Positions 22,202-24,387 are shown, counted from the whole stretch's first letter. The stretch is 62,980 nt of DNA, filler included, from Salisapilia sapeloensis CBS 127946 (GCA_023334545.1; 11 parts of 11 records of this genome joined end to end with filler, not necessarily neighbours in it), one strand, 5' to 3'. The notes: generated by a model not told the origin, from the letters alone. Program-made: numbers and translations.

Positions 22202-24387
22202 GACACACTGAAATGCGAACTTCCACCTTTAATCCATCAAAGGGTTGCCGGCGAGAGCCCTACAGATCAACAGAACCTTTAGTCTATTTCTAGTTTACAA
22301 GCACACTTTGAAATACTTACATAGAAGCATTTCGAACACGCATGATAAAATAGACATCCTTATTGCCAAGAGACGGGAAACCTTGGTACCAAGGCTTGGG
22401 GAGGAATCCATACGTGTCTACATTATTGTCCTGAAGCTCCCTATATCAAGTAGCAAGTTGGGGAATAATGGCATCCATAAATTGAACATTGTCATATTTT
22501 ATAAACTACTGTTTCGTACAAGATTTTGACTGCAGGTATATCCGCAGGATTGTTTTTCAGTCCGTTGTTTAGCATATAGCTATATACAAATACACCCGTA
22601 TTAAATAGAAAGCTAAGATCATTATCAGGAGGTACTTACACTTTTTCGAGGCTAGGCTACTTTCCACCCCATTCCTTTAACTTTGCATCATGTGCGCTCC
22701 AGACATACATTTAGCATACGACTATCGAAGCTGATATTGACAAAGATCAATACATAAAACTTCACTACGGAACCGATGGTATCGTTATATGCTTCATCAA
22801 GGAATGCGATGTTGTTACCAGTCAAATCGCTGTTCAAAAAAATATTTAGTTGCCTTAGTCCTAGGTGAAATAGTAGGATGCGTACACTGCTTTCAAATGT
22901 TAACACTTGTTTCCACGTAGATTCTCTTTCGTCAGCATGTTGTACGTCAAGGATCTGCCCTCCACACTTATGAAATCAGTGTATCTCAATCCCGTCTTAT
23001 ATGTGCCTCACAAGTACGCTATCTTCATCTTCGAGCAGTTAGAATCCTTAAGAACATTGTAATCGAGATATCTACTCCATGCATGAGTGGTTATTTACTT
23101 GATTCTTATTTAACTAGAGCTTACGCGTCGGTGAGTTTGGACATGGTCGCCATAAATTCCTTGATGCTATTCTTTCCTACATTTCTGCATAAAAACGACA
23201 CATGTAATATATATCCTGAATAGGCAATAGACGAAAACCTACATGTAGTTGAGGTCCTTCCATTTCCCAGTAACGCTCTCCAACTTGCCGTCGTGGGTTT
23301 TGTTTAGTTTATATGCATGAACAGATTGATACTTGATCTACCAAGCTAGTGTGTCGGGAAGATATTATACAGATGTCGGAGCTTGGGAAAGCTTTCTCCA
23401 TCAAGATTCTCGAGCAAGGTTTCAGTCATGTATCTGTTCAGGTAAAATTTTAGTGTCCAAGCTATCGATTAGTATCCAATTTCGCATCAGACGTACAGTT
23501 CTTTCAACTTTGAAAATCTTCCTGAGAATTTCTTTACTGGGTTCTTGGTCAGATAATTGTATTCATACATGAAGTTTCAGTCATGTAAAATGATATAATA
23601 TCTTTTATATCGTGCATTGTGGTGATATTTGGCATCTGCACGCTAAAGTTGGAGATACTGTTGTTGTAAAAGCTTTTAAATAGGTACAAACGATAAATAT
23701 ACATCATAAATTAGTCATAGACAAATCCCCACAAGCTTCTTAGGTTATTCCATTTGCCATTGATCTCCTTCGATGTGCCATTCAACATTGATCTAGTTTG
23801 TATACATTGACAGATTTATATTTTAACATCGAGGATATTGTGCTGAGATGATAATTTACAGATTGCGAAGCTTGGGAAAGTTTTCTGCATTTATACTCTT
23901 GAGCAAGCCTCCATTCATGCATCTGCTCATGTCAACCTTTAGTAAGCGCATTATTTCGTATTTCTCAGTTCCAGATCAAACATACAAGTACTCTAGCTTT
24001 GGAAACGTTCCTGACATTTCTTCAATAGGATTTCATTTCAGCAGACTGCAAATGATAATGAGTCAAAGTTCATGTACTGCTACGTTTTTCAAGATAATAT
24101 ACAGCATTCTGGCGTGTTAAAACTGGTCTGCGTTGATCTTCGTGATCTTGCCTTTGTTCAAATTACTATAGCATAGGAAGCATTAGAGCTATTTCTTCGT
24201 CGAACTTTGACCGGTTCACCTACATTCTAGTCTCTTCGTGTGAAAATGTTATATTTGAGAGCTCTTTGTCATCGATGTCTCTAACACCATAAATGCCAAC
24301 ATCAGGATCTTTCTCCTCGGCATATATGCCTGCCAACGTCCAAAGCAAGAGAAAGGCATATGTGATTTTTCGATTGATGCATTTCAT
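22202..24387 (-). pseudogene. Secreted multi-exon leucine-rich-repeat gene, degraded; at least 17 exons, about one LRR per exon
   Basis: Exons 24387-24224 (signal), 24165-24103, 24045-23986, 23922-23860, 23792-23733, 23672-23616, 23556-23497, 23433-23371, 23303-23243, 23184-23125, 23071-23012, 22954-22886, 22829-22758, 22696-22640, 22579-22520, 22440-22321, 22259-22202. Products include FPKLEYL, FPKLRNL, FSKLKEL, DLTGNNI and LAGNPL. Five in-frame stops, four non-canonical or broken splice sites and one +1 exon. Confidence 0.8.

What the first reader, a model, noticed from the sequence alone, without database searches (positions are those of the whole stretch)
22202..24387. One-LRR-per-exon cassette array: 16 consecutive phase-2 introns, 57-72 bp exons, duplicated 4-exon block
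Seen in sequence: after a signal-peptide exon, the minus strand holds a run of micro-exons, mostly 60 or 63 nt (range 57-72, one 120). Each encodes about one short LRR (e.g. CMNGGLLKSINAENFPKLRNL, YLTKNPVKKFSGRFSKLKEL, DLTGNNIAFLDEAYNDTIGSVVKL) and all are flanked by phase-2 introns, so any exon could be skipped, duplicated or swapped without a frameshift. Exons 3-6 are paralogous to exons 7-10 (NPI/NPV, FPKLR/FPKLR, GKW/GKW, NSI/NSI), which indicates a block duplication at exon granularity. The ORF track shows none of this. Established knowledge: exon-per-repeat, same-phase LRR arrays with exon shuffling are described for brown-algal (Ectocarpus) ROCO/NB-ARC LRR genes, and oomycetes have LRR receptor kinases. 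Inference: this is a modular, possibly hypervariable recognition-receptor family. This copy is broken (five stops, four non-canonical or broken splice sites) and could be a dead copy or a donor reservoir for conversion.
Basis: partly seen in the sequence, partly recalled or inferred. Interest (0 to 1): 0.75.

Follow-up and report, generated by a model that had tools for sequence, protein, structure and literature searches.

The report
Decayed one-LRR-per-exon secreted gene
This is a real but broken copy of a tandemly duplicated eukaryotic gene for a secreted leucine-rich-repeat protein in which each repeat has its own tiny exon; the layout is striking, but it is already known from ciliates, brown algae and vertebrate hormone receptors.

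Summary
On the minus strand, a signal-peptide exon (24387-24224) is followed by 16 micro-exons down to 22229. Most are 60 or 63 nt (range 57-72, one of 120). The 16 introns are 53-79 nt and all sit in phase 2, splitting the codon of a conserved hydrophobic LRR residue. Thirteen introns are GT..AG.

The copy is dead. It has in-frame stops in E2, E3, E12 and E14, plus the E17 stop that may be the natural one.

Exons 3-6 and 7-10 are a 489-bp tandem DNA duplication that includes the introns. A second gene copy starts at 20808 and runs off the piece.

No transmembrane or kinase exon follows, so this is a secreted LRR-only protein, not a shown receptor kinase. Hypervariability, shuffling between genes and a donor-reservoir role could not be tested. 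No relatives were reachable and the organism is unresolved.

An excess of TAA/TAG among the stops raised a variant-code idea. It is not significant (P about 0.4), and TGA, the splice lesions and the frameshift remain under any TAR-sense code.

This is a new variant of a known architecture, of modest interest.

The parts
24224..24387 (-). E1: start codon, signal peptide (basic N-region, hydrophobic core) and N-terminal cap. Ends with 2 nt of a split codon, donor gtaggt.
   Evidence: 55% aa identity to E1 of the second copy
24103..24165 (-). E2, 63 nt, one LRR. In-frame TAA.
23986..24045 (-). E3, 60 nt, one LRR. In-frame TGA. Paralogue of E7.
23860..23922 (-). E4, 63 nt, one LRR. Paralogue of E8 (76% nt identity).
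23733..23792 (-). E5, 60 nt, one LRR with the GKW motif. Paralogue of E9. Weak donor gtgggg.
23613..23672 (-). E6, 60 nt, one LRR. Donor broken (cg in place of gt).
23497..23556 (-). E7, 60 nt, one LRR. Acceptor broken (aa in place of ag).
23371..23433 (-). E8, 63 nt, one LRR.
23243..23303 (-). E9, 61 nt, one LRR with the GKW motif. Acceptor broken (aa), and one nucleotide too long, so the frame shifts.
23125..23184 (-). E10, 60 nt, one LRR.
23012..23071 (-). E11, 60 nt, one LRR.
22886..22954 (-). E12, 69 nt, one LRR. In-frame TAA.
22758..22829 (-). E13, 72 nt, one long LRR. Donor broken (tt in place of gt).
22640..22696 (-). E14, 57 nt, one LRR. In-frame TAG in the column where E5 and E9 carry the aromatic residue of GKW.
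22520..22579 (-). E15, 60 nt, one LRR.
22321..22440 (-). E16, 120 nt, twice the unit length (two repeats without an intron between them).
   Evidence: no Pfam or Atlas match on its own
22229..22259 (-). E17: last LRR start (GNP motif) and TAA. This is either the natural stop or a further break. A phase-2 donor-like gt follows 2 nt later, and a possible short tail exon follows at 22140-22096 ending in TGA (inference only).
23125..24045 (-). Two copies of a four-unit block of 489 bp (E3-E6 and E7-E10, with their introns). This is a tandem DNA duplication.
   Evidence: (D2)
24388..24711 (-). 5' flank of copy 1, duplicated with the gene (about 65% identity to 20809-21130). It holds a shared CTCACTTCA initiator-like motif 40-50 nt before the ATG.
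   Evidence: (D1, D3)
20624..21130 (-). Second, tandem gene copy: 5' flank, E1 (ATG at 20808, ends 20645, donor gtaagt) and the start of intron 1. The rest is cut off by the edge of the piece.

Best explanation
The stretch is a pseudogenised member of a tandemly duplicated family of secreted, LRR-only proteins. The host is a eukaryote with short introns whose lineage I could not resolve.

Architecture (shown). The gene is built from units of about 120 bp. Each unit has one exon of 60 or 63 nt encoding one 20-21-residue LRR, plus one intron of about 60 nt. Every intron sits after the second base of the codon for the hydrophobic residue at position 4 of the LxxLxLxxNxL core. All internal exons are therefore phase 2-2 symmetric.

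Growth (shown). The array grew by tandem duplication of DNA blocks that carried exons and introns together. The 489-bp block of four units is one such event. The whole gene with its promoter was then duplicated again, with a unit of about 3.58 kb.

Function (inferred). An intact product would be a curved LRR solenoid of about 16 repeats, exported through its signal peptide, acting as an extracellular binding protein. Symmetric phases allow repeat number to change by unequal crossing-over or exon skipping without a frameshift.

State (shown and inferred). This copy carries premature stops, four dead splice sites and one frameshift. It has decayed neutrally by roughly 0.1 substitutions per site. 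Under the standard code it cannot make the protein.
For: - Exon table with phases, splice sites and stops.
- LRR core at fixed offsets from the acceptor in 9 exons, against a mean of 1.0 and a maximum of 5 in 500 shuffles.
- Exon-peptide alignment shows the x-L-x-x-N-x-I...F-x-x-L pattern.
- The only three PDB chains matched by the unit profile are LRR proteins, though weakly (best E 0.24).
- Exon GC 41% against intron GC 34%; 14 of 16 introns carry in-frame stops if read through.
- Block duplication with introns and constant 489-nt spacing.
- Gene duplication including 320 nt of 5' flank, 67.5% identity over 511 nt, E 4e-40.
- Past purifying selection: dN/dS is 0.37 between the two E1 copies and 0.42 for E3+E4 against E7+E8.
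- The decay is self-consistent. Four or five nonsense codons imply d of 0.09-0.11. That predicts 6-7 hits in the 64 essential splice nucleotides, and 4 are seen.
- Few indels fit the near-perfect conservation of intron lengths between blocks: 63/63, 67/67, 60/58, 57/56.
- No ORF with a family match lies between E17 and the next copy.
Against: - No intact relative was found anywhere, so an intact product and its architecture are inferred from a broken copy.
- Single exon peptides are too short for Pfam.
- Six of the seven internal stops in this gene and the neighbouring trypsin-like gene are TAA or TAG. The trypsin-like frame has no other lesion. This would also fit a code in which TAA and TAG are sense codons.
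- The organism and its genetic code are unknown.
- The end of the gene (E17 stop against a further short exon) is uncertain.
- E5+E6 against E9+E10 show dN/dS of about 0.94, so part of the array shows no constraint.
Confidence: 0.7

Rival explanations
1. The organism reads TAA and TAG as sense codons, as ciliates and at least a dozen other lineages do. Most of the 'stops' would then not be stops, the neighbouring trypsin-like gene would be intact, and the LRR gene would be only lightly damaged.
For: - Six of the seven internal stops in the two genes are TAA or TAG.
- The trypsin-like frame runs 333 codons in one frame with only TAG and TAA inside, and ends on TGA.
- Many independent TAA/TAG reassignments are on record (abstract of PMC5304391).
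- The known 90-bp LRR exon arrays are in Tetrahymena, which uses such a code (PMC6564038).
Against: - Neutral mutation of these very codons gives 73% TAA/TAG, so 6 of 7 has P = 0.41.
- E3 has an in-frame TGA, which is the codon that ends the trypsin-like frame.
- Four splice sites and one frameshift are broken under any code.
- About 40% GC, several genes on one 7-kb piece and 53-79-nt GT..AG introns do not resemble sequenced ciliate macronuclear genomes (my own knowledge).
- The two E1 exons (110 codons together) hold no TAA or TAG.
Confidence: 0.1
2. The copy is still used. Because all exons are phase 2-2, the exons with dead splice sites (E6, E7, E9, E13) are simply skipped in frame. Alternatively, the locus serves as a reservoir of LRR cassettes for gene conversion or alternative splicing in a hypervariable recognition family.
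For: - Skipping E6+E7, E9 or E13 keeps the frame, as the exon lengths show.
- In brown algae, LRR-only loci have been proposed as reservoirs, and ROCO LRR exons are alternatively spliced (PMC11378527).
Against: - The stops in E2, E3, E12 and E14 sit in exons with good splice sites, the first at about codon 70. Skipped transcripts would still be cut short.
- The two gene copies are only about 67% identical at the 5' end, and the two blocks about 60-70%. There are no tracts of near-identity, so there is no sign of recent conversion.
- No expression data are available.
Confidence: 0.07
3. It is the extracellular part of an LRR receptor kinase, or a member of the ROCO or NB-ARC LRR family, whose signalling exons lie downstream.
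For: Only the analogy in exon structure with brown-algal ROCO genes.
Against: - A signal peptide is present, whereas ROCO and NB-ARC proteins are cytosolic (my own knowledge).
- The frame stops in E17.
- The roughly 1.05 kb before the next copy's duplicated 5' flank has no ORF with a Pfam match and no kinase-like or hydrophobic transmembrane frame.
- Exon length (60/63 against 72 nt) and the intron's position within the repeat differ from the brown-algal type I exon.
Confidence: 0.05
4. It is not a gene at all: a degenerate non-coding tandem repeat of about 120 bp, with splice-like dinucleotides present by chance.
For: - GT/AG chains of the right sizes are common by chance here.
- Tandem Repeats Finder sees no array, so the repeats are very diverged.
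Against: - The LRR core at fixed phase is far above shuffles.
- Composition differs between exons and introns.
- dN/dS is well below 1 in E1 and in E3+E4 against E7+E8.
- A start codon with a signal peptide is conserved between the two copies.
Confidence: 0.02

Closest known systems
Tetrahymena LRR genes with arrays of exactly 90-bp exons (Xiong et al. 2019, PMC6564038)
   Same: - Tandem arrays of equal-length LRR exons.
[quoted passage not shown]
- A junction codon is shared by neighbouring exons.
- Growth is by clonal or tandem duplication of exon-intron units.
- The genes are young, fast-evolving and often clustered.
   Different: - Exons here are 60 or 63 nt, with one 20-21-residue repeat per exon. 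In Tetrahymena they are 90 nt with a 30-residue repeat unit.
- The introns here are about 60 nt.
- GC is about 40%, against the very AT-rich Tetrahymena genome (my own knowledge).
- No sequence relationship was shown.
- That paper states it knew of no such arrays outside Tetrahymena.
Brown-algal ROCO 'type I' LRR exons (Zambounis et al. 2012, PMC3341825; PMC11378527)
   Same: - One LRR per exon, with phase-2 exons.
- Exon duplication and shuffling.
- Many pseudogenes in the family.
   Different: - Those exons are 72 nt (24 residues) and end just after the NxL of the core. Here the intron splits position 4 of the core, so the intron sits elsewhere in the repeat.
- ROCO proteins carry ROC-COR domains. 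This gene has a signal peptide and no further domain.
Gonadotropin receptor genes of vertebrates (Koo et al. 1991, as cited in PMC11378527); plant LRR receptor kinases such as ERECTA and SERK (my own knowledge, not tested)
   Same: - LRR ectodomain encoded by similar-sized exons, one repeat each.
- Introns in phase 2.
- Taken as evidence of growth from a single prototype exon.
   Different: - Those repeats are about 24 residues (exons of about 72 nt).
- They are joined to a membrane receptor body.
- Those genes are conserved and single-copy, not decaying tandem copies.
Secreted LRR-only binding proteins such as plant PGIP (PMC4367531 lists them; resemblance by architecture only)
   Same: Signal peptide followed by a run of LRRs and nothing else; an extracellular binding role.
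   Different: - PGIP repeats are the 24-residue plant-specific type, and its genes have few or no introns (my own knowledge).
- No sequence similarity was shown here.

Membership tests
Leucine-rich repeat proteins (general) | Tandem repeats of 20-30 residues with the core LxxLxLxxNxL | tested here: met
   In the exon-peptide alignment, hydrophobic residues fill core positions 6 and 11 and N or G fills position 9 in nearly all units. The junction codon gives L, I, V, F or M in 13 of 16 units. There are 9 fixed-phase matches against a mean of 1.0 in shuffles.
Leucine-rich repeat proteins (general) | Significant match to curated LRR models or to solved LRR proteins | tested here: inconclusive
Single exon peptides of 20-39 aa give no Pfam hit, and 19-aa exons are below the tool's minimum. 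The unit profile hits only three PDB chains, all LRR proteins, but the best E is 0.24.
Phase-2 exon-per-LRR arrays (architecture class: Tetrahymena, brown algae, gonadotropin receptors) | Consecutive LRR exons of near-equal length, each a multiple of 3, all flanked by phase-2 introns | tested here: met
   Fifteen internal exons of 57-72 nt (one of 120) and 16 phase-2 introns. The only exception is the frameshifted 61-nt E9.
[quoted passage not shown] | Exons of exactly 90 bp | tested here: not met
   Exons are 60 or 63 nt. The family definition is from PMC6564038.
Brown-algal ROCO LRR genes | 72-nt type I LRR exons with the exon ending after NxL(x) | tested here: not met
   Both the length and the intron's position within the repeat differ.
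Brown-algal ROCO LRR genes | ROC-COR GTPase domains after the LRRs | tested here: not met
   No such frame or Pfam match lies downstream of E17 within the gene unit. A signal peptide is present.
LRR receptor kinases | Transmembrane helix and protein kinase domain after the LRRs | tested here: not met
   The stretch 22229 to about 21130 has no kinase-like ORF or Pfam hit. This holds for this broken copy only; intact paralogues could not be examined.
Processed or unprocessed pseudogene | Disabling lesions in a sequence otherwise homologous to a gene family under selection | tested here: met
   The copy has 4-5 premature stops, 4 broken splice sites and 1 frameshift. dN/dS of 0.37-0.42 shows past constraint. 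The introns are retained, so it is an unprocessed duplicate.

The most novel reading that the evidence does not exclude
The two copies belong to a large, lineage-specific family of secreted LRR genes built from 60/63-bp phase-2 exons. This would be a further, independent origin of the exon-per-LRR array. It would have the shortest exon unit yet described and a different intron position within the repeat. In this family, in-frame exon skipping and unequal crossing-over would diversify an extracellular binding repertoire, and decayed copies like this one would be its by-products or its reservoir.
Probability: 0.15. Interest if true: 0.6.

Novelty: new variant of a known kind. Interest (0 to 1): 0.3.

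Why it matters
If the family is large and alive elsewhere in this genome, it adds an independent case to a short list: Tetrahymena, brown algae and vertebrate glycoprotein-hormone receptors. In each of these, LRR domains grew exon by exon with phase-2 introns. Here the intron sits at another place in the repeat, which argues for convergence on the same trick rather than common descent. That bears on how repeat proteins acquire modular, frame-safe gene structures, and on whether such structures are used for diversification. As it stands, on one 7-kb piece with one dead copy and the first exon of a second, it is a tidy example of gene birth and death and not a new mechanism.

Tried and rejected
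- **Pfam:** exons of 20 aa or more gave nothing. Ten other ORFs of the piece gave nothing meaningful.
- **Relatives of the gene:**
  - A word search with the profile of the two E1 peptides found no candidate.
  - A metagenome scan with the same profile matched 403 patterns, none confirmed.
  - A metagenome scan with the trypsin-like N piece, hoping for a syntenic locus, confirmed none.
- **Identifying the organism:**
  - A word search with the trypsin-like N piece found nothing.
It gave 57 hits, the best at 31% identity.
  - Those hits come from fireflies, an ostracod, tsetse, a gar, the oomycete Lagenidium and Vibrio, so there is no taxonomic signal.
- **ESM Atlas on E16:** best score 0.83, below the useful range.
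- **RNA genes:** Rfam and tRNA scans found nothing.
- **Plain GT/AG chain statistics:** not discriminating. I replaced this with a fixed-phase LRR-core test.
- **A third four-exon block (E12-E15):** considered, but exon-peptide scores do not support it.
- **RIP-like mutagenesis of duplicates:** rejected. There is no directional C-to-T or G-to-A bias (55 against 47, and 48 against 50) and the transition:transversion ratio is about 1.
- **Exonisation of the two introns with dead donors:** rejected. Their lengths are not multiples of three.
- **Not done:** joining the exons into a protein for a search or a fold was left out. The last word search was not spent, because exon peptides can only meet proteins of similar length.

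Full report
**What is there.** All coordinates are on the minus strand of the piece (20619-27780).

- A start codon at 24387 opens a 164-nt exon. It encodes a typical signal peptide (basic start, hydrophobic core) and a short N-terminal region, and it ends two bases into a codon at a gtaggt donor.
- Sixteen further exons follow down to 22229. Their lengths are 63, 60, 63, 60, 60, 60, 63, 61, 60, 60, 69, 72, 57, 60, 120 and 31 nt. The introns between them are 53-79 nt.
- Each exon from E2 on begins with the third base of a split codon and ends with the first two bases of the next.
- The split codon encodes L, I, V, F or M in 13 of 16 junctions.
- Counted from the acceptor, the exon peptides carry a hydrophobic residue at position 2, N or G at position 5, I/L/V at position 7, and near their end F/W/M-x-x-L.
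- Together this is the LRR core LxxLxLxxNxL, with the intron inside the codon for core position 4. Each exon is one repeat of 20-21 residues.

**Is it more than chance?**

- A naive test is not informative in this AT-rich DNA. Chains of AG...GT segments of the right size are as long on the other strand and nearly as long in shuffles.
- A sharper test is informative. Acceptor-preceded phase-2 starts that carry the LRR core number 9 in the gene. The opposite strand gives 1, and 500 dinucleotide shuffles give a mean of 1.0 and a maximum of 5.
- Exons are 41% GC and introns 34%. Fourteen of 16 introns would stop the frame if read through.
- A profile of the exon units matched only three chains among 177,635 distinct PDB sequences. 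All three are LRR proteins, but the best E-value is 0.24, so this is no more than consistent.
- Single exon peptides are too short for Pfam.

**Duplications.**

- Exons 3-6 and 7-10 start 489, 489, 489 and 488 nt apart.
- Self-blastn aligns 23794-24022 with 23305-23534 at 70% identity over 235 nt (E 1.5e-20). This stretch runs through E3, intron 3, E4 and intron 4.
- Intron lengths are kept almost exactly between the blocks: 63/63, 67/67, 60/58, 57/56.
- E3/E7, E4/E8 and E5/E9 are reciprocal best partners among all exon peptides. E6/E10 match by position only.
- The 'duplicated 4-exon block' is therefore real. It is a plain tandem duplication of DNA that carried its introns along, not evidence of cassette exchange.
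- The whole gene is duplicated too. 24203-24711 aligns with 20624-21130 at 67.5% identity (E 4e-40). This covers about 320 nt of 5' flank and a second first exon, with its ATG at 20808, 55% amino-acid identity and an intact gtaagt donor. The piece ends there.
- dN/dS is 0.37 between the two first exons and 0.42 for E3+E4 against E7+E8, so the family has been under purifying selection. E5+E6 against E9+E10 are saturated, at about 0.94.

**State of this copy.**

- In-frame stops lie in E2 (TAA), E3 (TGA), E12 (TAA) and E14 (TAG). The E14 stop falls in the column where E5 and E9 have the aromatic residue of a GKW motif.
- E17 ends in TAA, which may be the natural end.
- The E6 donor, E7 acceptor, E9 acceptor and E13 donor lack GT or AG.
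- E9 is one nucleotide too long, which shifts the frame.
- The numbers hang together as neutral decay. Four to five nonsense codons imply about 0.1 substitutions per site. That predicts six to seven hits in the 64 essential splice nucleotides, and four are seen.
- The low indel count fits the conserved intron lengths.
- There is no RIP-like directional bias.

**A variant genetic code?**

- The neighbouring gene upstream (26744-25743, same strand) is a trypsin-family gene lying in one frame. Only a TAG and a TAA interrupt it, and it ends on TGA.
- Counting both genes, six of seven internal stops are TAA or TAG. I therefore tested the idea that these are sense codons here.
- Neutral mutation of these very codons yields 73% TAA/TAG, so the excess has P = 0.41.
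- The TGA in E3, the splice lesions and the frameshift remain under any such code.
- I keep this rival at about 0.1. It cannot be closed without other genes of the genome.

**What it is not.**

- About 1.05 kb separates the E17 stop from the start of the next duplicated unit. No frame there resembles a transmembrane segment, a kinase or a GTPase, and no ORF there has a Pfam match.
- With its signal peptide, the product would be a secreted LRR-only protein.
- The receptor-kinase or ROCO reading is therefore unsupported for this copy. Intact paralogues could not be examined.

**Relatives and organism.**

- No relative of the LRR gene could be reached. The E1 profile found nothing in the word search or in the metagenome contigs.
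- To learn the lineage I used the single full HMMER search on the 198-residue N piece of the trypsin-like gene. It gave only 57 hits, the best at 31% identity. The top clusters I looked up come from arthropods, a fish, the oomycete Lagenidium and Vibrio.
- The organism therefore stays unresolved. What the sequence shows is a eukaryote with about 40% GC, introns of 53-79 nt with GTA/G donors and YAG acceptors, and intergenic spacers of about 1.3 kb.
- Nothing suggests that the contig is human.

**Comparison with what is known.**

- Same-phase, exon-per-repeat LRR arrays are established in three settings:
  - Tetrahymena has tens of thousands of exactly 90-bp LRR exons, more than 96% of them flanked by phase-2 introns (PMC6564038).
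  - Brown-algal ROCO genes have 72-bp phase-2 exons, one LRR each, with many pseudogenes (PMC3341825, PMC11378527).
  - Gonadotropin receptor genes have phase-2 introns between their LRR exons (Koo et al. 1991, as cited in PMC11378527).
- The present gene works like these but is not a member of any of them. Its exons are 60/63 nt, its repeats are of the short 20-21-residue kind, and it is a secreted LRR-only protein.
- Its intron splits core position 4. The brown-algal exon ends after the NxL. That difference points to an independent origin of the same architecture.

**Verdict.**

- Observation: confirmed.
- Interpretation: partly supported. The modular architecture, the block duplication and the broken state hold. 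The receptor, hypervariable and reservoir readings are unsupported or untestable here.
- Novelty: a new variant of a known kind.
- Interest: modest.

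Noticed in passing
window 25743-26744, minus strand: A trypsin-family gene (Pfam PF00089 on two pieces, E 8e-6 and 3e-7) with its own signal peptide lies in one frame. 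It is interrupted only by TAG (26150-26148) and TAA (26072-26070) and ends on TGA. The His and Asp motifs are present. In the alignment to neutrophil elastase, the catalytic Ser column holds Pro (GDPGSP against GDSGSP). It is therefore a pseudo-protease, a pseudogene, or both. It is very divergent: the best hit among 1.84 billion representatives is 31% identical.
   Followed up: partly
window 23125-24045, and 24203-24711 against 20624-21130: Indels are strikingly rare relative to substitutions. Paralogous introns that are 30-40% diverged keep their lengths (63/63, 67/67, 60/58, 57/56), and block spacing is 489, 489, 489 and 488 nt.
   Followed up: partly
window 21180-21210: A GC-rich 32-nt palindrome (87.5% self-complementary in self-blastn) lies about 50 nt upstream of the point where similarity between the two gene copies begins (about 21130). 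It may mark the duplication junction.
   Followed up: no
window 24427-24435 and 20848-20856, minus strand: Both LRR gene copies keep the motif CTCACTTCA 40-50 nt before the ATG. It is initiator-like, and a TTCATTTTC stands about 50 nt before the trypsin-like ATG. This hints at short 5' leaders and a shared core-promoter type. It is no proof of lineage.
   Followed up: no
window 22096-22228, minus strand: Two bases after the E17 stop there is another phase-2 donor-like gt. About 88 nt later an acceptor (ttgcag) is followed by a short hydrophilic frame ending in TGA. This could be a last small exon if the E17 TAA is a lesion and not the natural stop.
   Followed up: no
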